Positions 9,926 through 24,523 of a stretch of 64,000 nucleotides of DNA are shown here, piece by piece. The stretch lies in the IMG/VR virus record IMGVR_UViG_3300044712_001255, positions 248,001-312,000 of that record. One strand, given 5' to 3'. The translations under genes were made by a program, and so were the position numbers. Every line of letters starts with the position of its first letter. The stretch's first letter is position 1. Below the pieces are notes generated by a model that was not told the origin of the DNA, did not search any database, and worked only from the letters and a program-made list of their open reading frames with translations.

Positions 9926-10009
9926 GGTGCGTTGCCCGAATGGTTCAAGGGGCGAGGCTGTAGTCCTCGCGGTTAAGACCGATTGGTGGTTCGAATCCAT
10001 CACGCATCA
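9926..10009 (+). tRNA. tRNA-Tyr(GTA)
   Basis: Cloverleaf, CGAGG-CTGTAGT-CCTCG, long variable arm. Confidence 0.9.
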
Positions 10010-10055
10010 CCGGAACTAACGAGTTCTGATGTTCTCTGAAAACTGATCGTTGTAT

Positions 10056-10141
10056 GGATGTGTTGAGCAGGTGGTGAGCTCAGCTGACTGTAAATCAGCC
10101 GCCCGTAACGGGTTTGTCAGGTTCGATTCCTACCGCATCCA
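10056..10141 (+). tRNA. tRNA-Tyr(GTA)
   Basis: GCTGA-CTGTAAA-TCAGC, long variable arm. Confidence 0.9.
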
Positions 10142-10148
10142 CTCATAT

Positions 10149-10231
10149 TCTCGGGTCGGGAAATTGGTATCCCAAGAGATTGTTAATCTCTCGCACGTAA
10201 GTGTATGTAGGTTCGAGCCCTACTCCGAGAG
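10149..10231 (+). tRNA. tRNA-Asn(GTT) with long variable arm
   Basis: AGAGA-TTGTTAA-TCTCT, G73, variable region CGCACGTAAGTGTAT. Confidence 0.85.
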
Positions 10232-10232
10232 C

Positions 10233-10320
10233 GAACTCATAATGCAAGTGCCTGCGTGGAGCAGGAATACTGCAAGTGAAAGGAAGATTAACATACCAAG
10301 TAACACCAAACAGTGGGTTC
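10233..10320 (+). ncRNA. structured RNA with internal GTGAA...AGTAAC helix
   Basis: Closing GAACTC/GGGTTC, hairpin CCTGC/GCAGG, GTGAA 10276 and AGTAAC 10299. Confidence 0.45.
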
Positions 10321-10324
10321 ACAT

Positions 10325-10397
10325 TGCGTAGTAGGCAAATTGGTAAGCCGTGGAGTTGTTACCTCCTTGATTGCGGGTTCGAATCCTGCCTGCGCAG
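10325..10397 (+). tRNA. tRNA-Asn(GTT)
   Basis: TGGAG-TTGTTAC-CTCCT, G73. Confidence 0.85.
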
Positions 10398-10399
10398 CG

Positions 10400-10582
10400 C
10401 CGGATAGTGGTGGGTTCCACTGCGTAAGTGAATGAAGTAACTATGCTAATGCGACGCTTGGGTTCGAGTCCCAACAGGTAACAAATGGGCATAATGGTAA
10501 CGGTTACTGGTTACGCAAAACAAGTTGACTACGAGGGCAAATGTTAGCGTAATCTACTGGGTTCGATTCCCGATAGTCCGCA
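10400..10582 (+). ncRNA. structured RNA with two T-arm-like hairpins
   Basis: GGTTCGAGTCC and GGTTCGATTCC hairpins, GTAAC-TATGC/GCATA-GTTAC and TTACGC/GCGTAA helices; no cloverleaf. Confidence 0.45.
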
Positions 10583-10595
10583 AATCACAATGAAT

Positions 10596-10666
10596 GCCTC
10601 ACTAACATAATGGTAGTGTAACTGGTTCTTACCCAGCTAGTCTCAGTTCGATTCTGGGGTGTGGCA
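10596..10666 (+). tRNA. tRNA-Lys(CTT)
   Basis: ACTGG-TTCTTAC-CCAGC. Confidence 0.85.
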
Positions 10667-10667
10667 C

Positions 10668-10738
10668 TGCGGCGTAGTTCAATGGTAAAACAGCTCGCTC
10701 TGACCGAGTATCTGTAGGTTCAACTCCTACCGCCGCAA
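10668..10738 (+). tRNA. tRNA-Gln(CTG)
   Basis: GCTCG-CTCTGAC-CGAGT. Confidence 0.9.
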
Positions 10739-10741
10739 CGA

Positions 10742-10916
10742 GCCGACAATTCCAGTTTCGAGTACTGGACGCACTTGATAACATTGGCGCTTGAAAGGGC
10801 CCATTCACATTGTCTCGAGCACCAGTGTGATGGGCAGCAAGTACGTAAAACGCCTCACGACATCGTAGAAATAGCAATGAAAACAAAGTGTGTAATGCAA
10901 GTGGTAGCATATCGGC
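10742..10916 (+). ncRNA. circularly permuted tRNA-like RNA, copy 1
   Basis: 3' half 10742-10777 (GCCGA, T arm, CGCACTT-G) precedes 5' half 10886-10916 (AAGTGTG, D arm ATGC/GCAT, TCGGC); all four stems pair. Confidence 0.75.
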
Positions 10917-10924
10917 GTGTTTTT

Positions 10925-10995
10925 TGGAGCATCATCTAATGGCAGGATAGTAGCCTTTGAAGCTATGAATAGGGGTTCGAGTCCCTTTGCTCCAA
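10925..10995 (+). tRNA. tRNA-Gln(TTG)
   Basis: GTAGC-CTTTGAA-GCTAT. Confidence 0.9.
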
Positions 10996-10998
10996 CAA

Positions 10999-11151
10999 GC
11001 CCGAGACCTGGGTTCGAGTCCCAGTTGGACGGTGGCGCTTGAGAGCAAGTCAACGTGCTGATCACACGGAGACATCGCTAGTACGTAAGTCGCCGGCAAT
11101 TGGCTGATCACCTTTTGTCTTGTCCAGTAGTTTAGCGGTCAGAACACGGGC
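10999..11151 (+). ncRNA. circularly permuted tRNA-like RNA, copy 2 (Asp-like scaffold)
   Basis: 3' half 10999-11032 (GCCCG, T arm, TTGGACG-G) precedes 5' half 11121-11151 (TGTCCAG, D arm GTTT/GAAC, CGGGC). Confidence 0.8.
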
Positions 11152-11164
11152 AGTCCTTTCACAT

Positions 11165-11237
11165 GCACTAGTAACTCAATCGGTAGAGTAGACGGCCTTT
11201 AACCGTAAAGTTGAGAGTTCGAGCCTCTCCTGGTGCA
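11165..11237 (+). tRNA. tRNA-Lys(TTT), C33 variant
   Basis: Loop CCTTTAA. Confidence 0.8.
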
Positions 11238-11252
11238 CTTCAACAACGATTT

Positions 11253-11324
11253 GCTTCTGTACGCATCGGGTGAGGCGGGTGGATTGTCAATCCATTGAGG
11301 CGGGTTCGAGTCCCGTCAGAAGCG
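11253..11324 (+). tRNA. tRNA-Asp(GTC)
   Basis: GTGGA-TTGTCAA-TCCAT, G73. Confidence 0.9.
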
Positions 11325-11330
11325 CAATAC

Positions 11331-11403
11331 GTCCCTATAGCTCAACGGATAGAGCGCTTGGCTACGAACCAAGAGGTTGTAAGTTCGAATCTTGCTAGGG
11401 ACG
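11331..11403 (+). tRNA. tRNA-Arg(ACG)
   Basis: CTTGG-CTACGAA-CCAAG. Confidence 0.92.
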
Positions 11404-11404
11404 C

Positions 11405-11478
11405 TGCGGGTTAGAGAAGAGGCCCATCTCACTTGGCTCATAACCAAGAGACCGCCGGTTCGAATCCGGCATCCGCTA
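11405..11478 (+). tRNA. tRNA-Met(CAT), initiator-like
   Basis: CTCATAA loop, 1:72 mismatch; only two G-C pairs at base of anticodon stem. Confidence 0.8.
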
Positions 11479-11479
11479 C

Positions 11480-11554
11480 GACGCTGTAGCTCAAATGCAA
11501 GAGCAGCTGCAATTAAGCAGCAAGATGTTGGTTAAAATCCAGCTGGCGTCACCA
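11480..11554 (+). ncRNA. tRNA-shaped RNA with 6-nt non-canonical anticodon loop and encoded CCA
   Basis: Intact acceptor, D and T stems; GCTGC-AATTAA-GCAGC; ends ACCA. Confidence 0.65.
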
Positions 11555-11555
11555 T

Positions 11556-11631
11556 GGCCTTGTCGTCTATGAATGTAGGACGCCACCCCTTAGTCGAGGT
11601 GGAAAAACAGGTGCGAATACTGTCGAGGCCG
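11556..11631 (+). ncRNA. Glu-like tRNA scaffold with 10-nt anticodon loop
   Basis: GGCCTTG/CGAGGCC acceptor; CCACC-CCTTAGTCGA-GGTGG; degenerate T loop. Confidence 0.55.
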
Positions 11632-11637
11632 CAAATT

Positions 11638-11710
11638 GATTCTGTCGTCTATGAGTAAGACAATCCCAAATTGGTGGGAATAAAAGCTGATTCGTTGTCA
11701 GCCTGGATCA
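11638..11710 (+). ncRNA. tRNA-shaped RNA with non-canonical anticodon loop
   Basis: GTCT/AGAC D stem; TCCCA-AATTGG-TGGGA; GCTGA/TCAGC T stem. Confidence 0.55.
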
Positions 11711-11711
11711 C

Positions 11712-11785
11712 TGGCACATGATGTAGTGGTTTCTGCATGCTGGTCTGATAAATCAGTCGTACGAGTCCGATTCTCGTTGTGCCTA
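11712..11785 (+). tRNA. tRNA-Ile(GAT)
   Basis: CTGGT-CTGATAA-ATCAG; slightly atypical T loop. Confidence 0.75.
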
Positions 11786-11786
11786 C

Positions 11787-11858
11787 GGCCTTGTCGTCTA
11801 TCGGTAGGACAATTGGTTCTCAGCTAATAAAGGACGGGTTCGACTCCCTCCAAGGCTA
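11787..11858 (+). tRNA. tRNA-Glu(CTC)
   Basis: ATTGG-TTCTCAG-CTAAT. Confidence 0.85.
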
Positions 11859-11860
11859 CA

Positions 11861-11967
11861 CTCTTTTGCATTGTGGTCGTGTCTCGACGGGGACCAGCGA
11901 TAGGTTCAAATCCTATCATAAAATTTGGTAGCTGAGCGTTGGTTCGAATCCAACGGGTGTAAAAGAG
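11861..11967 (+). ncRNA. closed RNA with two tandem T arms
   Basis: 10-bp closing stem CTCTTTTGCA/TGTAAAAGAG; ATAGG-TTCAAAT-CCTAT and GTTGG-TTCGAAT-CCAAC. Confidence 0.6.
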
Positions 11968-11973
11968 ATTTTT

Positions 11974-12047
11974 GGTCCCATCTTCTAAATGGTCAGGATA
12001 CTAGACTTTCAATCTGGTAATGGCGAGTTCAAGTCTCCCTGGGATCA
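11974..12047 (+). tRNA. tRNA-Glu(TTC)
   Basis: CTAGA-CTTTCAA-TCTGG. Confidence 0.9.
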
Positions 12048-12133
12048 CCTCGAGTTTCCTTCATGAACTTTGTCGTGCCTGCGTGCGTGGAAAGCGACTA
12101 GATCACCTGGTGACAATCGGGAAAGACCGATAA

Positions 12134-12207
12134 CGGGGTGTACCTCAGTCTGGTAGAGGGCTTGTTTTGGGTACAAGACGTCGCACGTTCGATTCGTGTC
12201 ACCCCGA
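12134..12207 (+). tRNA. tRNA-Pro(TGG)
   Basis: CTTGT-TTTGGGT-ACAAG, C1-G72, A73. Confidence 0.9.
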
Positions 12208-12221
12208 CAACGAAAGATTAC

Positions 12222-12293
12222 ATGCCACTGGTGTTAATGGTAACATGTGGGTTTCCAAGTCCCGTGATGCGCGTTCGATTCGTGCGTGGCATG
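12222..12293 (+). tRNA. tRNA-Trp(CCA) (Gly TCC register less consistent)
   Basis: TGGGT-TTCCAAG-TCCCG, G73. Confidence 0.65.
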
Positions 12294-12360
12294 CTAAACA
12301 AAAATGTGTGATACAAGCTCACACATTAGGAATACAACATACAAACGCAAGGAAAAAGTC

Positions 12361-12876
12361 ATGAATATCAGCCAAGCTCTTCGTCGTATCTCAGTCATTA
12401 AGGGTCAGCTCGCAACCACAGCAACACGTTTCGCCAGTTCAGTCACGTGGATTGATGACGCAAAGCCAACATATTCGCTTGCTGAGTGCGATGTTGCGTG
12501 GGCTCGTCTCGTAGGTGAGCAGACGTCGCTTGAGGCCGCAGTGGCAATTGCCAATGCAACGAACAAGATCACCTATCGTGGTCAGGAATTCACGCTTGCG
12601 TTTGCCGTGAAGCAGTTGGCTGTTTTCAAGGCAAAGATTGCGCTCTTGCGAACCCTGAATTGTCAGGCGACTGCAGAACGCACCGATGTTACTCGTGATA
12701 CTGAGTACGTAAATGGAAATTACGTAACTGTCACTCGAGAGAAGAAGGTTCACTGTGCATTCACTGAGCGTGAGCGTGATACGAGTGTTCAGGTAGCGCA
12801 GACAGACTTTGACGAGCTCAACGCACTCGTCGAGGCGGCAAATCACACCATTCAGGTCGACCCTCAGGTCGTCTGA
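12361..12876 (+). CDS. helical/coiled-coil protein, DIP1984-like
   Basis: MNISQALRRISVIKGQL...IANATN...ELNALVEAAN resembles DIP1984-family pattern (recalled, not searched). Confidence 0.55.
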   Translation: MNISQALRRISVIKGQLATTATRFASSVTWIDDAKPTYSLAECDVAWARLVGEQTSLEAAVAIANATNKITYRGQEFTLAFAVKQLAVFKAKIALLRTLNCQATAERTDVTRDTEYVNGNYVTVTREKKVHCAFTERERDTSVQVAQTDFDELNALVEAANHTIQVDPQVV

Positions 12877-12883
12877 TGTGAGA

Positions 12884-13081
12884 TGCGCCGAAAGGGAAGT
12901 TGCTGTTGAAACCCTGTTGATTTAAAATCAACTCAACCCTAATAAGGAATGAAAGCTATTGGTATCGGTTCTGGCATCGCATTCAGCACTCAGCGTCCAG
13001 CATCTTTTCCTATCAGCTCATAGCCCTTAGCAGGTAGATTTCAGCAATCAGCAGTCAATTACAACACGCTTCCCTTGCGTT
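12884..13081 (+). ncRNA. structured RNA with 7-nt-period YAGC repeats
   Basis: Closing AAGGGAAGT/GCTTCCCTT; YAGC at 12984,12991,12998,13014,13021,13028,13042,13049. Confidence 0.6.
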
Positions 13082-13085
13082 GTAT

Positions 13086-13157
13086 GCGGTGATAGTTTAG
13101 TGACAAAACGGCAGGCAACCAAAGCCTGAGATCATGGGTTTGATTCCCACATCCGCG
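13086..13157 (+). pseudogene. degenerate Trp-like tRNA (loop AACCAAA)
   Basis: CAGGC/GCCTG stem, no U33, mismatched acceptor. Confidence 0.45.
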
Positions 13158-13269
13158 CTAAGTAACGAGAAAAATTATCGGGTGAAATACCCATATGCCT
13201 GATTGCGTAAGAAGGGTCGACACTTCTGCGATGGAGGTACAACGCCAGAGGAGCGTTAACGTGAAAGTT
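13157..13269 (+). ncRNA. AGUA/GAA-helix RNA
   Basis: AGTA-ACG (13161) ... CGT-GAA (13261), internal hairpins. Confidence 0.5.
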
Positions 13270-13270
13270 T

Positions 13271-13341
13271 GGGGCTTTCGTATAGCGGGATTACGCTGGC
13301 TTTGCAAGCCAGTCACACGGGTTCGAGTCCCGTAGGCTCCA
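13271..13341 (+). tRNA. tRNA-Ala(TGC)
   Basis: CTGGC-TTTGCAA-GCCAG, G3:U70. Confidence 0.92.
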
Positions 13342-13374
13342 CAAATCAACAATGACTGCGTTCAAAGTTGATCA

Positions 13375-13500
13375 ATTACGAGTAACTATTAAGCGGTGTA
13401 AATCCGCATTGTATGCAACGTCATCGACAGTTCGCCTCGATCGGGGTGACTGCCCTCTGCACGTTGACGTACTGGCCGGTGAGCCTAATGTGAAAGTAGT
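13375..13500 (+). ncRNA. AGUA/GAA-helix RNA
   Basis: ATTAC-G-AGTA-AC ... GT-GAA-A-GTAGT; GCGG-TGTAAAT-CCGC hairpin. Confidence 0.55.
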
Positions 13501-13505
13501 GTCAT

Positions 13506-13577
13506 GGGCCTGTAGTTTAATAGGGAAAATTCCTGCCTCGCACGCAGAAAACTCGGGTTCGAATCCCGATGGGTCCA
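13506..13577 (+). tRNA. tRNA-Ala(CGC)
   Basis: CCTGC-CTCGCAC-GCAGA, G3:U70. Confidence 0.88.
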
Positions 13578-13589
13578 CACAATCAACGA

Positions 13590-14630
13590 TCAGTTTGATA
13601 AGAGGTGCCTAAGAACGTCATTGTATGATTCAACCTTGACGTTTGACAATGCATTAAAGATTTCATCTTGCGTTGCCTTGTCTTTCACGTTCTGCTTGAT
13701 CCAATCAATCACTTGGTCCTTATTTACGCCGCCTTGCGTTTGTGATTGTGTACGTGAGCTGCTGTTGGTTTGTTGATTAGGTTGCTGTTCAGTAGACTCT
13801 TCATTAGACCGTTGTGATACTTGCGTATCAAAATTTTGGATCTCTTTGCCCACAGCTTGCATTTTTTCGATCATCGCTGCTAATTTGCCGCTTTTCACTA
13901 TTTGCGCAATTTCTCTTGCTATATTTGCATCAACGTTCATGCCAGCTTGCTTACCAGCTGACATTACAATTGATTGCAACGTATTACTTCCGTGTTGATC
14001 GCCTCGTGGCAATTCACTGCCGCCTGGTACCTTACCAGCATCTAGCGATGTTGCCTGCTTTGTTGGCCTTTGTGCTGTGATTTGTGGTTGTGGTTTTGGC
14101 TTTGGCGTCGCAGGTACAGGTTTCTTTCCAAACTTTGCATTTGCAAGTTCTTCATCTGATTGCACGCCACGTTCTTGTTCGTCTACTGCTTCCATTAGAC
14201 GACGAAACTTTGTGTGAAATGACTCATTGATTTCAGCAGCATCAACTTTTTGTGCAACAAGCTCGTAAAAATGCATACATTTCATGAACTCTTTTTCAAG
14301 AAGCTTGAAATCGCCGTCCTCGTCGTCAAAAATGTCCTTGGAAATACGACCTAAAAATCCTTTTATCTTATCAATGGTGCTTTTCTTATTAACTTGCTTG
14401 TACTTTGCGAATTTCCCTTTTATGTTATCAAGCGTTGTTGCAAGTTGATTTGCGATCGTTATTTGATCATTAGCTTTTAGTACGTCCACTGTTTGCTTCA
14501 CATTTTTGAAAAGCGCTTTGAATTTTGCAAATAACTCTTTATCGATTGCTTCATTCAATTGCTGACGAATGTTCTCATCGATCTTCAAAAGCTTTCGACG
14601 TTGCGCAAGCGTAAGTTTGCTGGTAGACAT
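13590..14630 (-). CDS. charged protein with Gln-rich linker (putative virion internal protein)
   Basis: IRQQLNEA and FRRLMEA motifs; ATAGTTA 10 nt upstream. Confidence 0.6.
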   Translation of the reverse strand: MSTSKLTLAQRRKLLKIDENIRQQLNEAIDKELFAKFKALFKNVKQTVDVLKANDQITIANQLATTLDNIKGKFAKYKQVNKKSTIDKIKGFLGRISKDIFDDEDGDFKLLEKEFMKCMHFYELVAQKVDAAEINESFHTKFRRLMEAVDEQERGVQSDEELANAKFGKKPVPATPKPKPQPQITAQRPTKQATSLDAGKVPGGSELPRGDQHGSNTLQSIVMSAGKQAGMNVDANIAREIAQIVKSGKLAAMIEKMQAVGKEIQNFDTQVSQRSNEESTEQQPNQQTNSSSRTQSQTQGGVNKDQVIDWIKQNVKDKATQDEIFNALSNVKVESYNDVLRHLLSN

Positions 14631-14878
14631 AGCGATATTCTAACTATTCGTTCGGTGATACACGATCAGTCTATGGCTTACTGTCAGCTTATGCAAGGAG
14701 AATACGTTAGGTGGCACGGGCAACTAGCCCTAGTTGTCTACGAATTTTGGGGCCTTGCAACGATTCGGTTGTGCGAGAAGCACTCGATCTACGAGGTTTT
14801 TTTGCACGATCTCAAACCTGTAACCCTTCAACCTGTCCGGTGTAATACCTGACTCAACGTGATAGGCTTGTCCTAGGC

Positions 14879-15256
14879 ATGGACACCACAACATACGTTT
14901 ATATCGCGCTTGGTGCAGTCGCCACAGGAACATCATTGTGGTGGGTAATTCGAACAATTCGTCGTCGATTGACGCGTCCTGCTGGTGGTTCACAGTCGGT
15001 GAACGTGAAACAGCTGCGTGTTCGACTTACAACGTTGACTGGCGAGATTTTTGATATCTCGTTTGAAGGCAAGGCATTCTACATCAATGACACAATCTGG
15101 ATGCAGACTGCTAAAGAAATTTTCAATGATTGGCGTGACGCAGGCGAACACGGTTTGTTTCGTGTTTCTCGTAACCAATGGATTGGCGCGCAGAACGTAA
15201 AGGAACTTCTCTTGGTGAAAGAGAGTGATCTTTTTATTGACGTGCCGTACTCTTGA
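14879..15256 (+). CDS. membrane-anchored hypothetical protein
   Basis: N-terminal TM; promoter GTGTAA(14840)-17-TAGGCT. Confidence 0.55.
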   Translation: MDTTTYVYIALGAVATGTSLWWVIRTIRRRLTRPAGGSQSVNVKQLRVRLTTLTGEIFDISFEGKAFYINDTIWMQTAKEIFNDWRDAGEHGLFRVSRNQWIGAQNVKELLLVKESDLFIDVPYS

Positions 15257-15258
15257 CG

Positions 15259-15287
15259 GTGTACAATCGCACACCGTGTATTATAAT
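15259..15287 (+). promoter_or_regulatory. putative phage promoter GTGTAC-17-TATAAT
   Basis: Perfect -10 hexamer with recurrent GTGTAV -35. Confidence 0.7.
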
Positions 15288-15318
15288 AGCAACCCAAAAA
15301 GAACAAGAAGGATAGAAA

Positions 15319-15705
15319 ATGGCAAAGAAGCTGAAGAAGAACGCAAAGTCCGAGACCGTTGTCGAGAACGTGGCCGCCGTCACTGTTGACGCTGCCCCTG
15401 CAAACCTGTTTGAGGCGTTCATTGATCTGAGTGATCCTGAGCTGTCTCAGGCAATCGAGCGGCTTGAGGCTGAGCGTAACAGCTGCCTGGCGCATCGAGA
15501 GGATCCTATGGAGATTGAGATTGAGAAGTGTTTCGCTCAGCGTGAGTGGAGACTGCGTGCTGAGCGTTGGAAGGCGCATTGCGCGTATCTCGATGCAGAC
15601 GCAGAGTCTCTTCGAGAGGATCAGTACCCGATCGCAGACCTCGATAATTGGGAGTTCGTCTCAATTTGCAACGGTTCGCGAGCGCCTCGCGTTCAGCGCG
15701 CCTAG
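15319..15705 (+). CDS. hypothetical acidic protein
   Basis: Strong SD AAGGA; 128 aa. Confidence 0.6.
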   Translation: MAKKLKKNAKSETVVENVAAVTVDAAPANLFEAFIDLSDPELSQAIERLEAERNSCLAHREDPMEIEIEKCFAQREWRLRAERWKAHCAYLDADAESLREDQYPIADLDNWEFVSICNGSRAPRVQRA

Positions 15706-15716
15706 GATTTCTTGAC

Positions 15717-16532
15717 ATGAAGCAAACGAGTAAAGAACCAAAGATAGTACAAACGTATCTCGACTCATTGACACGTTTGCCGCAGCTTTCGCACCCTGAT
15801 CTTGTGAACCTTTTCAAGGTTCTTGAAGATACTGAAGAGAAGCTTGCGGCAAAGGAACGAGCTCGCAAGAAGGTCATTGAGTGTAATCTTCGTCTTGTCG
15901 TATCAATCGCAAAGAAGTACTACAAGAACTACAAGTTGCCCATTGAAGACCTCATTCAAGAAGGCAACATTGGACTCATGAAAGCCGTAGAGCGATTTGA
16001 CTACAAGAAGGGTTGGCGGTTTTCAACGTACGCTACATGGTGGATTCGCCAAGCAATCGGTCAGCATGTTCAAAAGCGACGTCGAACCGTGCGATTGCCT
16101 GCGCATGCCGCTGCCGTTCAACGCAAGTTGATTCAGGCTGCTGATGATTTCAAGCAACTGCATGGTACTAATCCTTCGAGCGAAGAACTGCAGGAAGTCG
16201 TCAAGGCTTCAGAGACTGTGGTGCGAGCAACGATGTTTGCGTCTCGAGGAACTGTGTCATTGAATGATCCTGCGTATGCAGCTGCCGGTGGACCTACCAA
16301 GACAATTGCTGATGTTCTTGAGGATGAAGATCCGGGTGCTTGCCCATTCACCAACTGTGCTGACGTAGAGATTGTGAACATTGTTCGACAAATCATGAAA
16401 ACGTTGACGGTGAAAGAGTCTGCGATCCTACGTCTGAGGTTTGGCCTCATTGAGGATGATACGAATTCTGAAGAGTTCCCAATCACTCAAGATGAGATTG
16501 ACAACCTTGACGAAGGACGTGGTTTGACGTAG
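15717..16532 (+). CDS. sigma70-family RNA polymerase sigma factor lacking region 4.2
   Basis: NLRLVVSIAKKY, DLIQEGNIGLMKAVERFDYKKGWRFSTYATWWIRQAI; ends after LTVKESAILRLRFGL. Confidence 0.9.
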   Translation: MKQTSKEPKIVQTYLDSLTRLPQLSHPDLVNLFKVLEDTEEKLAAKERARKKVIECNLRLVVSIAKKYYKNYKLPIEDLIQEGNIGLMKAVERFDYKKGWRFSTYATWWIRQAIGQHVQKRRRTVRLPAHAAAVQRKLIQAADDFKQLHGTNPSSEELQEVVKASETVVRATMFASRGTVSLNDPAYAAAGGPTKTIADVLEDEDPGACPFTNCADVEIVNIVRQIMKTLTVKESAILRLRFGLIEDDTNSEEFPITQDEIDNLDEGRGLT

Positions 16533-16735
16533 CGATGGGCGGTGATGGATATGTATTATCTGTCATCGTTGCCATTTTCTGGAGTCAGCCATGAACTTTT
16601 CTGCTATCCTGGTCATAATTGGTCTCACATGCGCCGGTCTTAGCGCATTAGTTTTTACGTTACCGTTCATGGCCAGGATGCAGTGGTTCAAGGATCTTTT
16701 CATAGAGGAACAACCCGATATCGAAATAGTAGAAC

Positions 16736-17026
16736 ATGATGATGACGAATGAGATTACAGTTGGCATAGCTTTCATCATTGGCATTGCGTTGGGATATGT
16801 GGTGCGCTATGCAAGTGAATTCTTGACATCAAGAAAAGTACCAACACCAAAGCGCCTCAAAAAGGCAGACCTTGTAAAAGATATGCAAGATCGTATGCAC
16901 GATCGTCTCAATGAGATTGACTTGCCATTCGGTCGACCACGAAAAACAGAACATGCTCCGGTGACTGCGATTGGCAACGCTCGGGCAAGAACGATGTTGA
17001 TCAATAGAAAAGAAACAAAAGAGTAA
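16736..17026 (+). CDS. membrane-anchored hypothetical protein
   Basis: N-terminal TM. Confidence 0.5.
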   Translation: MMMTNEITVGIAFIIGIALGYVVRYASEFLTSRKVPTPKRLKKADLVKDMQDRMHDRLNEIDLPFGRPRKTEHAPVTAIGNARARTMLINRKETKE

Positions 17027-17028
17027 AA

Positions 17029-17328
17029 ATGAATCCAGGCAAGAAGTTCAAGGCGGGATATGCTACAGTTACAAGCGACAACGGTGGCGACAATTACCGT
17101 GAAATTGCCGAATTGATGACCCAGATAGGGTTCCCAATGAATCATTCATCTGCTCGTAATCACGTCATTAGGGCGATGCACAAGTTTGTGCTTGCATTTT
17201 GTCAAGCTCAAGGTATTGAATTCTCTGAAAAAGAGCAACTACGCATTGCTCGTGATCCTCGCTTTCAGGAGGCCATTTGCGATGTGATGCAGTACCTTGA
17301 GGCTGAGAAAGAAGATCGCCATATTTAA
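17029..17328 (+). CDS. helix-turn-helix protein resembling sigma region 4.2
   Basis: DNYREIAELMTQIGFPMNHSSARNHVIRAMHKF. Confidence 0.55.
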   Translation: MNPGKKFKAGYATVTSDNGGDNYREIAELMTQIGFPMNHSSARNHVIRAMHKFVLAFCQAQGIEFSEKEQLRIARDPRFQEAICDVMQYLEAEKEDRHI

Positions 17329-17332
17329 GGAC

Positions 17333-17785
17333 ATGAAACTGAAGATCAAGTACCAGCCCACAACGGCTGTGAGTCTTGAAAAGATGTTAAAGCGTCGCAA
17401 GATGTCGTTAGCAACATTCTTGACAGAACAGGGCATTAGCACATACGAAAGCTTGCGATCACGTTGCGCCACGATTGGCATCGTTCCGCCGTCGGAAGAA
17501 GAGTACCTACGTGTGTCTGGTCCAATTGTCTCAAACCCCCAAGAGGGCGTTGTGATTCTTGAGCCTATTCCTATCATCAATGATTCCACCGGTAAGGAAA
17601 CTGAGGAGATAGCTCCCGCACCATCTGCGGCTGATATCGCTGGTATAAAACAAACAGATGATGAGAAACCACGCAAGAAACGTGGAGGCTTTCAGCGATC
17701 TGCAGTCGTGGAATCTGTAGACGCTCCTGAGCGCGCCGACGTCATTGACGCGTTCATGTCTGGTTCAATTTTGCCAACTGCATGA
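17333..17785 (+). CDS. hypothetical protein
   Basis: ORF; ATATTTA at 17321. Confidence 0.55.
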   Translation: MKLKIKYQPTTAVSLEKMLKRRKMSLATFLTEQGISTYESLRSRCATIGIVPPSEEEYLRVSGPIVSNPQEGVVILEPIPIINDSTGKETEEIAPAPSAADIAGIKQTDDEKPRKKRGGFQRSAVVESVDAPERADVIDAFMSGSILPTA

Positions 17786-17820
17786 GTGTAGACAACGTAA
17801 TCATGAGATAGACTGGTCTC

Positions 17821-19149
17821 ATGATCAATCAGACCGTCGTCCAGATCCTAGAAGCACTCGAGAAAACTTCCAAGCGCACGGAGAAGGAAACCATCCTTAA
17901 GCAGCACGTAAAAAACGTGCTGCTTCGACAGGTCTTTGTTGCAGCAATGGATCCGTATACGAACTACGGCATTACGAAGTTTAAGAAGTGTCGTCCAGTC
18001 GCCCAGGAGAATGGCGGATCTGACGTTCTTCTAGAGGCGTATTTGACTCGTGTACTTCCTGTGTTGGCATCACGCGAAGTGAGTGGAAATGCGGCACGAG
18101 ATGTCATTGAAAAGACATTCAGCACGTTCAATGCTGACGAGCAGAAGTGGGCAGAACGCATTCTGTTGCATAATCTTCGATGCGGTGTGCAAGAGAAGAC
18201 TGTGAACAAGATCTGGCCCGGTACCATTTCTCCTTATGCGGTTCAGCTAGCAGTTCCTCTTGAACATCACGTTGTTGGTGAGAAAATCGTTCTTGACGAA
18301 CCCATCGTCTTTCCCGTTCTTGTTGAACCAAAGCTTGACGGTTTGCGACTCACTGCGACGAAAGAGAAGGGCGTTGTCACGCTGCGTACTCGAAACGGTA
18401 CTGAGCTTGATACGTTCCCGTCATTGATCAACTTTCTTACCGAGACCGACGGTGATGATTACGTTCTTGATGCCGAAGCCATGGGTGCAGATTGGAATGA
18501 AAGCGCATCTGTATTGATGTCTCGCAAGCGTAGCAAGGATGATAAGAACATGGTCTACAACTTGTTCGATGCCTTGACTCTGCAGGAGTGGAAGACACAA
18601 GATTGTAAGCGCACGCAAGGCACACGTAGAACTGACATGCTGTCATTGTGGAATCAACGCTGGCAGTGCGGTCCTATCAAGCCTACTGACGCGAAGCTGT
18701 GTCACAACCTTGAAGAAGTTCAAGCGTATTATGTAGAATGTGTTAACGCCGGGTACGAGGGCGTGATGATAAAGGATCCAAATGGTCTCTACACATTCGA
18801 TCGTACCAAGGCGTGGCGCAAGCTGAAGCCTTTCACTACGTACGAAGGCGTCGTGGTTGGGTGGTACGAGGGCAAGCGCGGCACGAAGCGTGAAGGAGAC
18901 TTTGGCGGGTTTAACGTTCTGTTGCCGAATGGCGTTGTCACAAACGTCGGTAGCGGATTCTCTGATGATGAGAAAGCAGAGATCAACAACGACCCAACGT
19001 CTTGGATCGGTAAGATCGTTGAAGTAAAGGGACAGCCCCCGCTGACTGACGACGGCAAGGTGCGCTTCCCGAGCAAGGTACGTTACCGCGAGGCGAGTGA
19101 CGTAGATCCCAAGGTTCTCGAAGCTTACGAAGCTTGGTCGGCTAGGTAA
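17821..19149 (+). CDS. lig: ATP-dependent DNA ligase
   Basis: EPKLDGLR (motif I), LDAE, YNLFD, YEGVMIKD, WRKLK, OB-fold VGSG; promoter at 17786. Confidence 0.92.
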   Translation: MINQTVVQILEALEKTSKRTEKETILKQHVKNVLLRQVFVAAMDPYTNYGITKFKKCRPVAQENGGSDVLLEAYLTRVLPVLASREVSGNAARDVIEKTFSTFNADEQKWAERILLHNLRCGVQEKTVNKIWPGTISPYAVQLAVPLEHHVVGEKIVLDEPIVFPVLVEPKLDGLRLTATKEKGVVTLRTRNGTELDTFPSLINFLTETDGDDYVLDAEAMGADWNESASVLMSRKRSKDDKNMVYNLFDALTLQEWKTQDCKRTQGTRRTDMLSLWNQRWQCGPIKPTDAKLCHNLEEVQAYYVECVNAGYEGVMIKDPNGLYTFDRTKAWRKLKPFTTYEGVVVGWYEGKRGTKREGDFGGFNVLLPNGVVTNVGSGFSDDEKAEINNDPTSWIGKIVEVKGQPPLTDDGKVRFPSKVRYREASDVDPKVLEAYEAWSAR

Positions 19150-19156
19150 TTACATC

Positions 19157-19447
19157 GTGGACAACGATCTGCAACATGCGTTCGCGCGAATAAGTTCTAT
19201 CTTGGAAGCTCACGAAATTATTGATTTTCGTGCAAGATGTTCCATGGGAATTTGGCAGGTCGTATTGCTTGGAAAAAATGGCGTCAAACGAGGCTCTGCC
19301 GACGTAGATCTGAGCAGAGCCTTTAATGACGCAGTGAATTACTACGTTGCAGCAACTACTGAGAATTCAACGGGATATTCACAGGATGGTATTGGAATTT
19401 CTCCCATTTCACTTGATCCACCGCCGTCTCCAAATCGTAGACGCTAG
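19157..19447 (+). CDS. hypothetical protein
   Basis: 96-aa ORF (GTG start). Confidence 0.45.
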   Translation: MDNDLQHAFARISSILEAHEIIDFRARCSMGIWQVVLLGKNGVKRGSADVDLSRAFNDAVNYYVAATTENSTGYSQDGIGISPISLDPPPSPNRRR

Positions 19448-19538
19448 ATCAATAAAATCAATACCTTGTACACGAGTGCAGGTTTACTTTGCCCATGGTA
19501 GAGTCAGACCATAGGCAAGGCAAAGGACACAAACACAC

Positions 19539-21179
19539 ATGGCTAAGAAGACTGCTAAGAATGTTGCTCCGGTTCAGATGTCTGAGGCTGACGCAGCGAA
19601 ACTGCGTGAGGCTGCGGCTCGATTCGATCTCAACGTTCACATCATCAATTTCCTCAGCTCTAACGCATTCTATGCTGAGATCTCTCGTCGAGTTCACAAG
19701 ATCAGCACGAAGGACATTCCCACCGCTGCTGTGGCTTGGAACCAGAAGCTCGACAACATCGTGTTGTACTACAACCCGGAATTCATGTGCCAGCACACCC
19801 CAAAGCAGGTGATTGGCATTCTGAAGCACGAATTCAGTCACTTGTTCTACGGACACTTGAACGCTCGTCGGAAGACTCCACACCGTATGTGGAACATCGC
19901 TACCGATCTTGCAATCAATTCGCTGATTGTTTCGAGCGAGCAGAATTCTGCTTCATATTCTAACATCAACAATCCTCAGGCTGTTTTGCCGGAATGCGCA
20001 TTGATTCCCGGCCACCCGGTTTTCTTTGCAGATCTCAAGCGGCCCTTGACGGCTGATGAGAAGGCTGCGCAGCCCATCGCTGCTCTTATCGAGAAGATGA
20101 AGCCGTTGCTCGCTTCTGAGGATTATTTCCAGCAGCTGATGAAGGTCGCAAAGGAACAGCAGAACACTTGCCCGATGTGTGGCGGTTCTGGCAAGATCAA
20201 GGTGAAGTCTGACGCGGGTGGAGATGAGAATAGCTCAGACGGGCGGGACGGCGTCGAGAAGGAAGGCCAGGACAAGGGCGAAAATGACAAGGGTAATGGG
20301 TCATCTCGCGGAGATGATTCTCACGACGAGGGATGCGAGGGCGATGGAAATTGTTCTTGTGGCCACGGCGATAACGAGCCCGGTGGTTGTAGTGGTCCTG
20401 ATGGTGAATATGATTGCCCTTGCTGCAAGGGCGATGGTGAGCTCGGTGACGGCATTGGTTCGATGGACGATCATGGATTTTGGGATGACATCCCGGAAGA
20501 TATGCGTGAATACGTCGAAAATCGTGTGCGTAACGTGATTGAGCGCGCTGTTGAATCCGCCGATCAGAGCTCGAATGGCTGGGGCTATATGCCTGCTTCG
20601 ATTCGTGAGGAGATTCGTCGGTTCGTATCCAAGAAGGTGCCGTGGCGCTCTGTACTCCGGCAGTTCATTGGAGTGCTTCTGCCAGGCGATCGTTCTACCA
20701 GCATCAAGCGCATCAATCGTCGCTATCCGTATATCCATCCCGGTGTGAAGCGTGGTCGCAAGGCTAAGCTTCTCGTCGCAATCGATATGTCTGGTTCTGT
20801 TGGAGAGGAACTTCTCGCAACGTTCTTTGCGGAACTAACCAACTTGGCAAAGAATTGTGAGATCGATGTTGTCCCGTTCGATTGCTCTGCTGAACCTGAA
20901 CATATCGTCAAGTGGCGACGTGGTGGTCCCCCTCCGATGGGTCGGGTGAAGGCCGGTGGTACCAGCTTTGATGCTCCCACTGACCTTGCCAATGATCCTA
21001 AGAACCGCGGTCGTTGGGATGGTCTGCTAATCGTCACAGACGGGATTTGCAACGCTCCCAAGGAAAGTCGGGTACGTCGCGGATGGGTTCTTGGTCCTGG
21101 GTGCAAGCTGCAATTCGACTCGAACGAGCTCCAGGTCTTCGTAGACAATGAGCGACCGATGGTCGGAGCGTGGAGGTGA
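19539..21179 (+). CDS. metallopeptidase-like plus vWA domain protein (DUF2201-type)
   Basis: HEFSH, NIATDLAIN, vWA DMSGS...GGT...IVTDG; promoter GTGCAG(19476)-17-TAGAGT. Confidence 0.8.
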   Translation: MAKKTAKNVAPVQMSEADAAKLREAAARFDLNVHIINFLSSNAFYAEISRRVHKISTKDIPTAAVAWNQKLDNIVLYYNPEFMCQHTPKQVIGILKHEFSHLFYGHLNARRKTPHRMWNIATDLAINSLIVSSEQNSASYSNINNPQAVLPECALIPGHPVFFADLKRPLTADEKAAQPIAALIEKMKPLLASEDYFQQLMKVAKEQQNTCPMCGGSGKIKVKSDAGGDENSSDGRDGVEKEGQDKGENDKGNGSSRGDDSHDEGCEGDGNCSCGHGDNEPGGCSGPDGEYDCPCCKGDGELGDGIGSMDDHGFWDDIPEDMREYVENRVRNVIERAVESADQSSNGWGYMPASIREEIRRFVSKKVPWRSVLRQFIGVLLPGDRSTSIKRINRRYPYIHPGVKRGRKAKLLVAIDMSGSVGEELLATFFAELTNLAKNCEIDVVPFDCSAEPEHIVKWRRGGPPPMGRVKAGGTSFDAPTDLANDPKNRGRWDGLLIVTDGICNAPKESRVRRGWVLGPGCKLQFDSNELQVFVDNERPMVGAWR

Positions 21180-21183
21180 TATC

Positions 21184-21459
21184 ATGTGGGGATTTCTTAG
21201 GGCAGTATTCTTTCTTTCATTGTTCTCAGGAGCGCTGAAATTCAGTCCACTGCTGAGATTGGTCACAGGAATCATCTTGACGCCAATCTGCGGGTTGGGG
21301 TTTGGAACCCTACTAAGCGTGCCATTTATTCTCCTGTTGCTCTTGGTGGGCGGTGGAGGAGGCTTAGGCTTGATGATTGGCGTATGGGGAACTTGTGTAC
21401 TCATTGCGTCAGGATGGGCATTCATCTCTTTGTTGCTTCCAAGCGTGAGTGACGATTAG
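21184..21459 (+). CDS. small membrane protein
   Basis: Three hydrophobic Gly-rich segments. Confidence 0.5.
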   Translation: MWGFLRAVFFLSLFSGALKFSPLLRLVTGIILTPICGLGFGTLLSVPFILLLLLVGGGGGLGLMIGVWGTCVLIASGWAFISLLLPSVSDD

Positions 21460-21467
21460 CTATATAC

Positions 21468-21719
21468 ATGACATTCTTCTGCGCCGGTGATGCGGTGACG
21501 GTGAAACCCGAATGGGACGCTGTCACCGTTTTTTCGTCATCAACGGCAAGTGATCGTGTTGCTATTGGAGAGTTCAAGCGTGGTCAACATGGTCTCGTAA
21601 TTTCAGTGGGTAAAGACATCGGGCAACCAATGATAGAGATCCTTGTAAGATCATTGGTTGGGTGGGTTGCTACAGCTGGCGTCATTAAGACATCATGGTC
21701 GTCGAACATTGACAGCTAA
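21468..21719 (+). CDS. hypothetical protein (SH3/KOW-like)
   Basis: Short beta-rich ORF; fold is a guess. Confidence 0.35.
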   Translation: MTFFCAGDAVTVKPEWDAVTVFSSSTASDRVAIGEFKRGQHGLVISVGKDIGQPMIEILVRSLVGWVATAGVIKTSWSSNIDS

Positions 21720-21857
21720 AATCCGCGTAGCGTGTGTATAGTATTGTTTGACGTTATGGCAATTCGTATTGTTCGTGGAATTGATCGCACTCGTAACAAA
21801 AAAGTGTATTCTTACGGACGACTAACTCATCCAGGATTAGGCGTAAGAAAAACATAT

Positions 21858-22607: not shown

Positions 22608-22608
22608 T

Positions 22609-23364: not shown

Positions 23365-23371
23365 TTTTTTA

Positions 23372-23400
23372 GTGTACTTGTGTGCGAGACATGATAACCT
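23372..23400 (+). promoter_or_regulatory. putative promoter GTGTAC-17-TAACCT for second RNA cluster
   Basis: Recurrent motif. Confidence 0.6.
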
Positions 23401-23406
23401 ATACTC

Positions 23407-23540
23407 AAGGTGCTGCGGCATCTACTTCAGGATGGTAAACATGCTACGCCAACTCAACACGATACAGAGAACACATACCGGCTTGATGCTGGTGTGCGGC
23501 CTGTCGTGTTTAGGTTTGCCATCCAGCGTCGGCCTCCTTA
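23407..23540 (+). ncRNA. rod-shaped structured RNA (6S-like?)
   Basis: GGATGGTAAAC/GTTTGCCATCC, AACACGA-CAG/CTG-TCGTGTT, CACATACCGGC/GCTGGTGTG nested helices. Confidence 0.35.
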
Positions 23541-23600
23541 CCCCCTCAGGGGTAAGATTTAGTTGCTGACATAGGCCCCTCGTCCTGGGCTAGAAGTTTT

Positions 23601-23670: not shown

Positions 23671-23722
23671 CGGATCGAAAGAAAGTTGTTTCGATCTTGT
23701 TCATTGACAATCTGCATTCTTT

Positions 23723-24522: not shown

Positions 24523-24523
24523 C

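What the first reader, a model, noticed from the sequence alone, without database searches (positions are those of the whole stretch)
11480..11710. Three adjacent tRNA bodies with intact stems but dead anticodon loops
Loops AATTAA (6 nt, with encoded CCA), CCTTAGTCGA (10 nt) and AATTGG (6 nt); similar cases at 13086 (AACCAAA) and 23601. Stems remain paired while only loops and T-loops deviate, the opposite of random pseudogene decay. Candidates for uncleavable decoys, uncharged-tRNA mimics acting on RelA/T-box sensing, or non-ribosomal aminoacyl donors.
Basis: partly seen in the sequence, partly recalled or inferred. Interest (0 to 1): 0.6.

Follow-up and report, generated by a model that had tools for sequence, protein, structure and literature searches.

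The report
Non-decoding tRNA look-alikes in jumbo phage
Three neighbouring genes in a giant phage's cluster of about 50 tRNA genes fold like tRNAs but cannot read codons; two similar genes in the same cluster have been kept in shape by selection, so these are probably retired tRNAs retained as folded units, not plain decaying junk.

Summary
Window 11480-11711 holds three head-to-tail cloverleaves between a working tRNA-Met and tRNA-Ile, inside a ~50-gene tRNA array of an uncultured 324-kb jumbo myovirus. All four stems are intact in each (20-21 of 21 pairs), but the anticodon loops are 6, 8-10 and 6 nt. The D-loop GG and the canonical T-loop are also lost.

They cannot decode. They are not recent copies (64-67% identity to any other tRNA here). 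A uniform neutral-decay model is rejected for each (P about 1e-3 to 1e-5).

No orthologue of the three could be found in any collection. The two "similar cases" do have orthologues in a relative whose synonymous sites are saturated (56% different). There the stems, acceptor and T-arm are unchanged or changed compensatorily, while the anticodon loops are rewritten. One of them (23601) is an ex-tRNA-Pro(UGG).

Best reading: retired tRNA duplicates kept as folded, co-transcribed units of a tightly tiled precursor. A trans-acting role is not excluded. The RelA/T-box-mimic and aminoacyl-donor ideas are not supported; the decoy idea is untested. This is a new variant of a known kind, of moderate interest.

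The parts
9926..35308 (+). tRNA array of the phage (45 ARAGORN / 46 Rfam tRNAs plus aberrant bodies), interspersed with small ORFs
11405..11479 (+). Working tRNA-Met(CAU). Its N73-C74 abuts position +1 of body 1 with no spacer.
   Evidence: (57.5 bits)
11480..11554 (+). Body 1: cloverleaf with 21/21 pairs, 6-nt anticodon loop AAUUAA, D-loop without GG, T-loop UUAAAAU, encoded ACCA
   Evidence: (Rfam tRNA 44.7 bits)
11556..11632 (+). Body 2: Glu-type cloverleaf. The first 15 nt and the D-stem are identical to tRNA-Glu(CUC) at 11787. Anticodon loop 8-10 nt, T-loop UGCGAAU, G53.A61.
   Evidence: (no tRNA hit)
11638..11711 (+). Body 3: Glu-type cloverleaf, 6-nt anticodon loop AAUUGG, T-loop UUCGUUG, A53-U61 in place of G53-C61. 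Its A73-C74 abuts tRNA-Ile.
   Evidence: (no tRNA hit)
11712..11786 (+). Working tRNA-Ile(GAU), starting directly after body 3
   Evidence: (47.3 bits)
11787..11859 (+). tRNA-Glu(CUC), the working paralogue of body 2
11974..12049 (+). tRNA-Glu(UUC). Rfam scores it 43.2 bits; default ARAGORN misses it. It is the nearest paralogue of body 3 (66%).
13085..13158 (+). Sister case: aberrant body with loop AACCAAA. Its orthologue is L083:1414-1487.
23601..23671 (+). Sister case: an ex-tRNA-Pro(UGG). Its orthologue is L085:3222-3292. A canonical tRNA-Pro(UGG) sits at the same position in L086 and L088.

Best explanation
Bodies 1-3 are retired tRNA genes. They are former decoding tRNAs (bodies 2 and 3 of the Glu family) made redundant by other copies in the array.

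They have lost everything a ribosome or a synthetase reads: a 7-nt anticodon loop with U33, and the G18G19/T-loop elbow. They are still transcribed within the same precursor as tRNA-Asp, Arg, Met, Ile and Glu, and they are kept as stable, self-contained cloverleaves.

Proposed mechanism (inferred, not shown): the array is tiled so tightly that N73-C74 of one unit is followed directly by +1 of the next. The RNase P cut at the 5' end of body 1 therefore creates the 3' end of tRNA-Met. Every unit must also fold on its own so that it does not mispair with its tRNA-like neighbours. Selection then keeps the acceptor, D, anticodon and T helices while the anticodon loop drifts freely.

Shown here: the anatomy, the tiling, the non-neutral pattern, and conservation with compensatory change in two sister bodies.

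Inferred: expression, RNase P cleavage, and the processing role.
For: **Anatomy and tiling**
- The spacers are 0, 1, 5 and 0 nt. The bodies follow the same junction pattern as ten zero-spacer pairs of working tRNAs.
- No + strand promoter-like or terminator-like site lies inside 11253-11860.

**Not young copies**
- Best identity to any tRNA in the window is 64-67%. The median best-paralogue identity among working tRNAs is 70%.

**Neutral decay rejected**
- P = 7e-5, 1e-3 and 1.5e-5 for the three bodies.

**Sister bodies compared with a relative (L083/L085)**
- Four-fold sites in the relative differ at 56%.
- Body 23601 has 0/47 differences in acceptor, D-stem, variable loop and T-arm, against 10/24 in the D-loop, junction and anticodon arm (Fisher 4e-6).
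- All four nucleotide changes in the stem of body 23601 keep pairing: one A-U<->G-C double change and two changes to G.U.
- Body 13086 has two double compensatory changes in the D-stem. Its 5-bp anticodon helix is kept by a register shift. The loop and variable region differ at 15/19 positions (Fisher 1.5e-7).

**Ancestry of 23601**
- More distant relatives (L086, L088) carry a canonical tRNA-Pro(UGG) at the position of body 23601.
- Relative to them, the body changed acceptor pairs 3-70 and 4-69 and a T-stem pair on both sides.
- The window still has two other tRNA-Pro(UGG) genes and both tRNA-Glu species, so the bodies are redundant as decoders.

**Investment in RNase P processing**
- A relative of this phage carries a full-length RNase P RNA beside its array.
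Against: - No orthologue of bodies 1-3 was found, so for them selection is inferred only from a model and from analogy.
- Spacers in the array are also well conserved (pooled p = 0.14). Against that yardstick the invariance of body 13086 outside its loop is not exceptional (P = 0.36), and that of 23601 is only moderately so (P = 7e-4).
- A recently exchanged array segment would mimic conservation. However, third-position divergence stays at about 40% right up to the stop codon next to the 5%-diverged spacer.
- Bacterial RNase P uses the D/T elbow, which all the bodies have lost.
- Bodies 2 and 3 are not needed to make the end of any working tRNA.
- Body 2 shares 15 identical nucleotides with tRNA-Glu(CUC) but has an unrelated anticodon arm and T-arm. 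That points to segmental exchange, which could yield intact hairpins without selection.
- There are no expression data.
Confidence: 0.4

Rival explanations
1. Neutral relics: ordinary tRNA pseudogenes with no function. They look intact because they died recently, or were assembled by segmental recombination or gene conversion between tRNA paralogues, and phage deletion has not yet removed them.
For: - ARAGORN flags all three as possible pseudogenes.
- Phage tRNA arrays are routinely reported to contain pseudogenes, for example XacN1 (PMC5852040).
- Body 2 is a mosaic: its 5' 15 nt and D-stem are identical to tRNA-Glu(CUC), while the other arms are unrelated.
- The array is rearranged quickly. 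L083 has a different gene where the window has tRNAs upstream of tRNA-Trp, and the window has an HNH gene that L085 lacks.
- There is no orthologue evidence for these three bodies.
Against: - Uniform decay is rejected for each body.
- They are as far from every paralogue as different tRNA species are from each other.
- The two aberrant bodies that can be compared across relatives persisted through saturating synonymous divergence with pair-preserving changes only.
Confidence: 0.3
2. Trans-acting tRNA-shaped RNAs, processed out of the precursor and acting on their own. They might serve as sponges or decoys for host tRNA-binding defence nucleases or tRNA-handling enzymes that recognise the acceptor/T-arm or the overall shape, or as small regulators. 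The anticodon loop would be either irrelevant or under diversifying selection.
For: - The pattern is the same as for the best explanation: helices conserved, anticodon loops rewritten.
- The non-canonical T-loops are invariant between relatives: 9 nt in body 23601 and 7 nt in body 13086.
- The array sits in a translation-maintenance island with a T4 Rnl1-like RNA ligase, PTH2 peptidyl-tRNA hydrolase and a NADAR domain protein. This suggests conflict over tRNAs.
- Published work shows that phage tRNAs counter tRNA-targeting defences (PMC10264068, PMC11555353, PMC11464382).
- T4 makes stable RNAs (RNAC, RNAD) whose function is still unknown.
Against: - Known anticodon nucleases read the anticodon loop, which is gone here.
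- T-loop invariance is no greater than that of the surrounding spacers.
- The divergence of the anticodon arm (0.42-0.79) is compatible with plain neutrality at p = 0.56, so diversifying selection is not needed.
- The 10-nt loop of body 2 has no complementary target above chance.
- There are no expression data.
Confidence: 0.2
3. Unconventional decoders: tRNAs that still work on the ribosome with 6- or 8-nt loops, as frameshift or stop suppressors.
For: ARAGORN can draw body 2 with an 8-nt loop C-U-UAGU-C-G that has U33. Huge phages are known to carry suppressor tRNAs.
Against: - Bodies 1 and 3 have 6-nt loops with no U33.
- Body 2 has a pyrimidine at position 37 and a C.A closing mismatch.
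- All three lack the elbow nucleotides.
- In the sister bodies the loop sequence and even its length differ between close relatives (AACCAAA vs AAUUUUCA; GUGGA vs CAGGAA). That is incompatible with a conserved decoding role.
Confidence: 0.04
4. One reading: uncharged-tRNA mimics acting on RelA or T-box sensing, or non-ribosomal aminoacyl donors.
For: The acceptor stems are intact and body 1 encodes CCA.
Against: - RelA and T-box sensing need anticodon pairing, and T-box also needs the elbow. Both are destroyed (established knowledge).
- There is no G3.U70, no long variable arm and no G-1, so no anticodon-independent synthetase identity is visible.
- The encoded CCA is at chance level.
Confidence: 0.03

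Closest known systems
tRNA pseudogenes reported in phage tRNA arrays (e.g. Xanthomonas jumbo phage XacN1: 58 tRNA-like sequences including pseudogenes; PMC5852040)
   Same: Both are tRNA-like sequences inside a large jumbo-phage tRNA cluster that gene finders flag as non-functional. Both arise from duplicated tRNA genes.
   Different: Here all helices are intact although many invariant loop nucleotides are lost. Two sister bodies also show conservation and compensatory change across saturated synonymous divergence, which a decaying pseudogene should not show.
Bacteriophage T4 stable RNAs RNAC and RNAD (species 1 and 2). They are encoded with the T4 tRNA genes, and their function is still unknown (PMC9697503; the location in the tRNA region is from my own knowledge).
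   Same: Both are small non-decoding RNAs encoded alongside a phage's tRNA genes, with no assigned function.
   Different: There is no sequence similarity: a sensitive blastn search of the phage collection with the three bodies found nothing. The present bodies are full four-arm cloverleaves clearly derived from tRNAs. Their expression is unknown.
Nuclease-insensitive phage tRNAs (anticodon-loop substitutions that evade VapC, PrrC and colicins; T5 tRNAs that rescue phage from retron and PARIS defences; PMC10264068, PMC11555353, PMC11464382)
   Same: Both are phage-encoded tRNA genes whose anticodon loops depart from the host consensus. The surrounding context suggests conflict over tRNAs.
   Different: Those tRNAs keep a 7-nt loop and a working anticodon and still decode. 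These bodies cannot decode, so they cannot replace depleted tRNAs.
tRNA punctuation of polycistronic transcripts (mitochondrial genomes) and non-aminoacylated viral tRNA-like processing modules (from my own knowledge)
   Same: In both, a tRNA-shaped fold serves as a cleavage signal for RNase P/Z and not as an adaptor. This matches the mechanism proposed here.
   Different: This is an analogy only. Processing of these bodies has not been tested, and they have lost the elbow that bacterial RNase P normally contacts.

Membership tests
tRNA (Rfam RF00005) | Covariance-model score at or above the gathering threshold of 29 bits | tested here: met
   This row is for body 1 only, which scores 44.7 bits.
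tRNA (Rfam RF00005) | Covariance-model score at or above 29 bits (bodies 2 and 3) | tested here: not met
   There is no tRNA hit for 11556-11711 even at E <= 10. Sister body 13086 scores 21.6 bits. The L085 copy of body 23601 scores 32.6 bits.
Decoding tRNA | Four-helix cloverleaf with a 7-bp acceptor stem, 3-4-bp D-stem, 5-bp anticodon stem and 5-bp T-stem | tested here: met
   The bodies have 21/21, 20/21 and 20/21 pairs. The cloverleaf is the minimum-energy fold of each.
Decoding tRNA | 7-nt anticodon loop with U33 and a purine at position 37 | tested here: not met
   The loops are 6, 8-10 and 6 nt. All 44 working tRNAs here have 7-nt loops, 93% have U33 and 100% have R37.
Decoding tRNA | D/T elbow: G18G19 in the D-loop and U54-U55-C56-R57-A58 in the T-loop, with G53-C61 | tested here: not met
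   All three bodies lack GG. Their T-loops are UUAAAAU, UGCGAAU and UUCGUUG. Each of these positions is kept in 98-100% of the working tRNAs.
Neutrally decaying tRNA pseudogene | Stems accumulate disrupting changes at the same rate as loops | tested here: not met
   For the three target bodies this is a model test only (P = 7e-5, 1e-3, 1.5e-5). For sister bodies 13086 and 23601 it was tested on real orthologues. No orthologues of the three target bodies were found.
Frameshift-suppressor tRNA with an expanded loop | 8-nt loop with U33, a four-base anticodon followed by a purine, and otherwise normal tRNA core | tested here: not met
   Only body 2 can be drawn with 8 nt, and that drawing has C37, a C.A closing mismatch and no elbow.
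Anticodon-independent aminoacylation substrates (Ala, Ser, Leu type) | G3.U70 pair, or a long variable arm | tested here: not met
   The 3-70 pairs are C-G, C-G and U-A. The variable regions are 4-6 nt.
T4 RNAC/RNAD | Sequence homology to the T4 stable RNAs | tested here: not met
   A sensitive blastn search of 11480-11711 against 50,697 phage records, T4 and its relatives included, found no match.
Processed unit of a polycistronic tRNA precursor | Co-transcribed with flanking tRNAs and cleaved by RNase P at its 5' end | not testable with these tools
   Only indirect evidence is available: zero-spacer tiling and no internal promoter-like or terminator-like sites.

The most novel reading that the evidence does not exclude
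Jumbo phages of this lineage maintain a class of selection-preserved, non-decoding 'ex-tRNAs'. The cloverleaf scaffold (acceptor, D, anticodon and T helices, and non-canonical T-loops) is conserved. The anticodon loop is free or even diversifying. The RNAs act in trans after processing, for example by titrating host tRNA-targeting defence nucleases or tRNA-handling enzymes that recognise shape and not the anticodon.
Probability: 0.15. Interest if true: 0.8.

Novelty: new variant of a known kind. Interest (0 to 1): 0.5.

Why it matters
Genome annotators and papers usually dismiss odd tRNA-like calls in phage tRNA clusters as pseudogenes. Here the pattern is the reverse of decay. Two comparable cases have been held in shape through saturating synonymous divergence, and one can be traced to a specific working ancestor, tRNA-Pro(UGG).

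If this is general, large phage tRNA arrays contain a second, non-decoding class of structured RNA. Its role is either as a processing unit of tightly tiled precursors or as a trans-acting tRNA mimic. That bears on why phages carry so many tRNA genes, on how such arrays are matured, and on the long-unexplained stable RNAs of the T4 tRNA cluster. It also gives concrete, cheap experiments.

Tried and rejected
**Search for orthologues of bodies 1-3 (all negative)**
- An exact 25-mer of body 1 in IMG/VR found only the source contig.
- Degenerate T-arm/acceptor patterns for each body in IMG/VR found only the source contig. One search used a mistyped pattern.
- Degenerate 3'-half patterns of the flanking tRNA-Ile and of tRNA-Ala(UGG-neighbour UGC) gave zero hits in metagenome contigs and in GTDB genomes. 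Those collections do not even hold the source contig.
- megablast and sensitive blastn against GenBank phages found no match.

**Relatives sought through neighbouring proteins**
- The 190-aa array ORF has one close relative, L083, whose array is rearranged upstream of tRNA-Trp. Its more distant homologues are not syntenic.
- The last ORF upstream of the array has no homologues.
- The DNA ligase has relatives only at 48% identity or less, with no adjacent array.
- The RNA ligase matches only the source contig.
- The L086 contig ends inside its tRNA-Ile.

**Ideas rejected**
- The encoded CCA of body 1 as a signal: it is at chance level.
- The weak RAGATH-21 and Plastid-ycf2 hits over the bodies: they score far below threshold.
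- A base-pairing target for the 10-nt loop of body 2: hits are at chance level.
- Sequencing-indel artefact: no single homopolymer indel restores U33, and the T- and D-loop lesions are substitutions.
- Recent copy of a neighbouring tRNA: best identity is only 64-67%.

Full report
**Where the window comes from.** The window is positions 248,001-312,000 of IMG/VR contig IMGVR_UViG_3300044712_001255, which is 324,468 bp long. The contig is an uncultured jumbo myovirus. It encodes baseplate wedge proteins, an ATP-dependent DNA ligase, a sigma-70-like factor, a T4 Rnl1-like RNA ligase and several HNH endonucleases. It has no close cultured relative: megablast found no match, and the ligase is at most 32% identical to any GenBank phage. 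Between 9926 and 35308 the + strand carries a very large tRNA array. ARAGORN genes and Rfam, and together they cover all 20 amino acids.

**The observation.**
- Body 1 is 11480-11554 with loop AAUUAA. Body 2 is 11556-11632, with a loop of 10 nt on a 5-bp stem or 8 nt on a 4-bp stem. Body 3 is 11638-11711 with loop AAUUGG.
- They have 21, 20 and 20 of 21 stem pairs intact.
- They fold into the cloverleaf as their unconstrained minimum-energy structure. Z-scores are -3.5, -1.7 and -2.3, similar to the real tRNAs next door.
- They tile head to tail between tRNA-Met and tRNA-Ile with spacers of 0, 1, 5 and 0 nt.
- Rfam accepts body 1 as a tRNA (44.7 bits) but does not see bodies 2 and 3 at all.
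- Besides the anticodon loops, all three lack the D-loop G18G19 and the U54-U55-C56-R57-A58 T-loop.
- Among the 44 working tRNAs of this phage, each of these features is present in 93-100%.
- The encoded CCA of body 1 is unique in the array but within chance expectation.

**Not recent copies, not uniform decay.**
- The bodies are 64-67% identical to their best match among all tRNAs in the window. That is the background similarity between different tRNA species here; the median best-paralogue identity is 70%.
- Bodies 2 and 3 are of the Glu family. Body 2 shares its first 15 nt and its D-stem with tRNA-Glu(CUC) at 11787, and the closest paralogue of body 3 is tRNA-Glu(UUC) at 11974.
- Both Glu isoacceptors are present as working genes, so the bodies are redundant as decoders.
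- I took the 3-5 lesions per body at about 11 near-invariant positions as the per-site change rate and simulated neutral substitution. The simulation predicts 10-13 intact pairs of 21, where 20-21 are observed. The probabilities are 7e-5, 1e-3 and 1.5e-5.
- This is a model-based test. It assumes the loop lesions arose by ordinary point substitution.

**The comparative test.**
- I could not find any orthologue of bodies 1-3. IMG/VR holds them only in the source contig.
- Hypothesis-neutral degenerate patterns for the flanking tRNA-Ile and for tRNA-Ala(UGC) found nothing in the metagenome or GTDB collections, which do not even contain the source contig.
- Protein-anchored searches did reach one close relative, JGI 3300071648 (contigs L083 and L085). 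They also reached more distant ones, Logan SRR29340339 (contigs L086/L089 and L088).
- None of those contigs covers the Met-Ile segment. In L083 the array is rearranged upstream of tRNA-Trp.
- They do cover both 'similar cases'.
- As a yardstick, four-fold degenerate sites of three shared genes differ at 56% (119/214) between the window and the close relative, which is essentially saturated.

**Body 23601.**
- The window copy and the L085 copy are identical at all 47 positions of the acceptor stem, D-stem, variable loop and T-arm, including a non-canonical 9-nt T-loop.
- They differ at 10 of 24 positions in the D-loop, junction and anticodon arm (Fisher 4e-6).
- The four changed stem nucleotides all preserve pairing: A-U<->G-C at one pair, and G.U<->A-U and U-A<->U.G at two others. 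The loop is GUGGA in one copy and CAGGAA in the other.
- In L086 and L088 the same position holds a canonical tRNA-Pro(UGG). That position lies downstream of the 251-aa ORF orthologue and upstream of tRNA-Pro(GGG).
- The body is therefore an ex-tRNA-Pro(UGG). Relative to those outgroups it changed acceptor pairs 3-70 and 4-69 (G-C to A-U) and a T-stem pair on both sides, lost G53-C61 and the UUCAAAU T-loop, and shortened the D-loop.

**Body 13086.**
- Compared with L083, the 24 nt of T-arm plus 3' acceptor, the 5' acceptor and the D-loop are unchanged.
- The D-stem carries two double compensatory changes (GCUC/GAGC versus GUUU/AAAC).
- The 5-bp anticodon helix is preserved by a one-pair register shift.
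- The loop (AACCAAA versus AAUUUUCA) and the variable region differ at 15 of 19 positions (Fisher 1.5e-7).

**Caveats on that test.**
- The spacers of the array are also conserved (p = 0.05-0.27, pooled 0.14). Measured against the spacers and not against synonymous sites, the invariance is much less striking: P = 7e-4 for 23601 and 0.36 for 13086.
- The anomaly then becomes the fast anticodon arm (P = 1e-3 and 5e-10).
- A recently exchanged array segment could produce this. However, third-position divergence stays at 8-10 of 21 up to the last codons of the adjacent ORF and drops to 5% immediately after the stop codon. That is easier to explain by constraint on the non-coding array.
- Working tRNAs are themselves heterogeneous between the two phages. 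There is 1 difference in 72 for Ala-UGC and Pro-GGG, 11 mismatches for Ala-CGC and 28 for Trp.
- Under either reading a single neutral rate cannot explain both compartments, and the compensatory pairs argue for selection on the fold.
- With two sequences per body the shuffle control of the pair counter is uninformative. Only the slid-partner control shows specificity: 97-100% paired, against 26-57% when the partners are slid.

**What they most likely are.**
- They cannot decode. The loops have the wrong length, lack U33 and lack the elbow, and in the sister bodies the loop sequence is not even conserved.
- They carry no anticodon-independent synthetase identity marks: no G3.U70 and no long variable arm. 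GluRS needs the anticodon (established knowledge).
- The best-supported reading is that they are retired tRNA duplicates retained as self-folding units of a tightly tiled polycistronic precursor.
- There are ten zero-spacer junctions between working tRNAs in which N73-C74 abuts +1 of the next gene. The Met|body 1 and body 3|Ile junctions follow the same pattern. An RNase P cut at body 1 would therefore make the 3' end of tRNA-Met.
- No promoter-like or terminator-like site interrupts 11253-11860.
- A relative of this phage carries a full-length class A RNase P RNA at the end of its array (259 bits). That indicates this lineage invests in RNase P processing.
- This mechanism is inferred. It is weakened by the loss of the elbow that RNase P contacts, and by the fact that bodies 2 and 3 are not needed for the end of any working tRNA.
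- I give it 0.4, plain neutral relics 0.3, a trans-acting role such as a decoy or sponge 0.2, and the remaining ideas under 0.1 together.

**Comparison with what is known.**
- Pseudogenes in jumbo-phage tRNA clusters are commonly reported, for example in XacN1. Evidence that such elements are held in shape is, as far as the searched literature shows, not reported.
- The RNAC and RNAD of T4 are the classical non-decoding RNAs associated with a phage tRNA cluster, and their function is still unknown. There is no sequence relationship.
- Nuclease-insensitive phage tRNAs keep a working anticodon, which these do not.
- I therefore rate this a new variant of a known kind, of moderate interest. The decisive data are orthologues of the three bodies and expression or processing evidence.

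Noticed in passing
L089:143-468 (+) (Logan SRR29340339_173060): A phage contig syntenic with window 13.6-25 kb (sigma-like factor, DNA ligase, 251-aa ORF, tRNA-Pro cluster) carries a full-length bacterial class A RNase P RNA (259.4 bits, E 1e-83). It lies directly after a tRNA-Ile(GAU) at the end of that contig's tRNA array. The window itself has no RNase P RNA hit. A literature search found no clear report of phage-encoded RNase P RNA.
   Followed up: partly
window 23365-23600: The 236-nt spacer after the 251-aa ORF differs at only 12 positions (5%) from the relative. Third codon positions of the ORF differ at about 40% right up to the stop codon. The spacer contains hairpins, and motifs such as GCUGACAUAGGCCCC are conserved even in the distant relatives L086 and L088. 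It is a candidate structured RNA or regulatory region.
   Followed up: partly
window 11872-11962: ARAGORN's 91-nt 'tRNA-Leu(CAA)' here is doubtful. It has 12 internal unpaired positions, its 'anticodon arm' is a T-arm look-alike (GAUAGG-UUCAAAU-CCUAUC), and Rfam gives no tRNA hit. It is probably another rearranged tRNA remnant next to the three bodies.
   Followed up: partly
window 28039-37938: The array is interleaved with translation- and RNA-maintenance genes. These are a SLOG-family protein (28039-28443), a NADAR domain protein (28412-28876), a radical-SAM/SPASM protein (30302-31363), peptidyl-tRNA hydrolase PTH2 (32571-32957) and a T4 Rnl1-like RNA ligase (36568-37938) directly after the last tRNA.
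   Followed up: no
window 11480-11711 and 13085-13158; L083:1414-1487: The aberrant anticodon loops of body 1 (AAUUAA), body 3 (AAUUGG) and the L083 copy of body 13086 (AAUUUUCA) all begin with AAUU. The window copy of 13086 begins with AA. Working tRNAs here start the loop with Y-U. AAUUA and AAUUU fit the old RAUUW consensus for RNase E sites (from my own knowledge). This could be chance and remains unexplained.
   Followed up: no
window 11974-12049 and 32444-32518: Two likely working tRNAs are missed by default ARAGORN. One is tRNA-Glu(UUC) (Rfam 43.2 bits). The other is a tRNA-Val(GAC) with C33 in place of U33 (Rfam 32.5 bits).
   Followed up: partly
window 11405-11479 and 11712-11786: Both working tRNAs flanking the bodies have a U1.U72 mismatch at the top of the acceptor stem. 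The tRNA-Met also has A11-U24, an initiator-like trait, but only two of the three G-C pairs typical of initiator anticodon stems. The tRNA-Ile has an unusual T-loop, UCCGAUU.
   Followed up: no
window 25813-25885: tRNA-Cys(GCA) is the one working tRNA that lacks the D-loop GG, and it also has a U at T-loop position 56 (UUUAAGU). This looks like a coordinated change of the two elbow partners in an otherwise normal tRNA.
   Followed up: no
window 8390-8758, 19539-21179, 23870-24466, 27015-27557, 35312-35632; L083:1-552: Several HNH-type endonuclease genes are scattered through and around the array. The one at 23870-24466 is absent from the relative L085. L083 has an unrelated zinc-finger/nuclease-like gene where the window has tRNAs upstream of tRNA-Trp. 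The array is being remodelled by mobile genes.
   Followed up: partly
window 25934-26030, 26136-26205, 26340-26407, 27570-27643: These are further weak tRNA-like bodies. One is a 97-nt element at 24.3 bits. The others are relaxed-ARAGORN 'Glu', 'Leu' and 'Ile(UAU)' calls with several mismatches. They were not analysed, and some may be chance calls.
   Followed up: no
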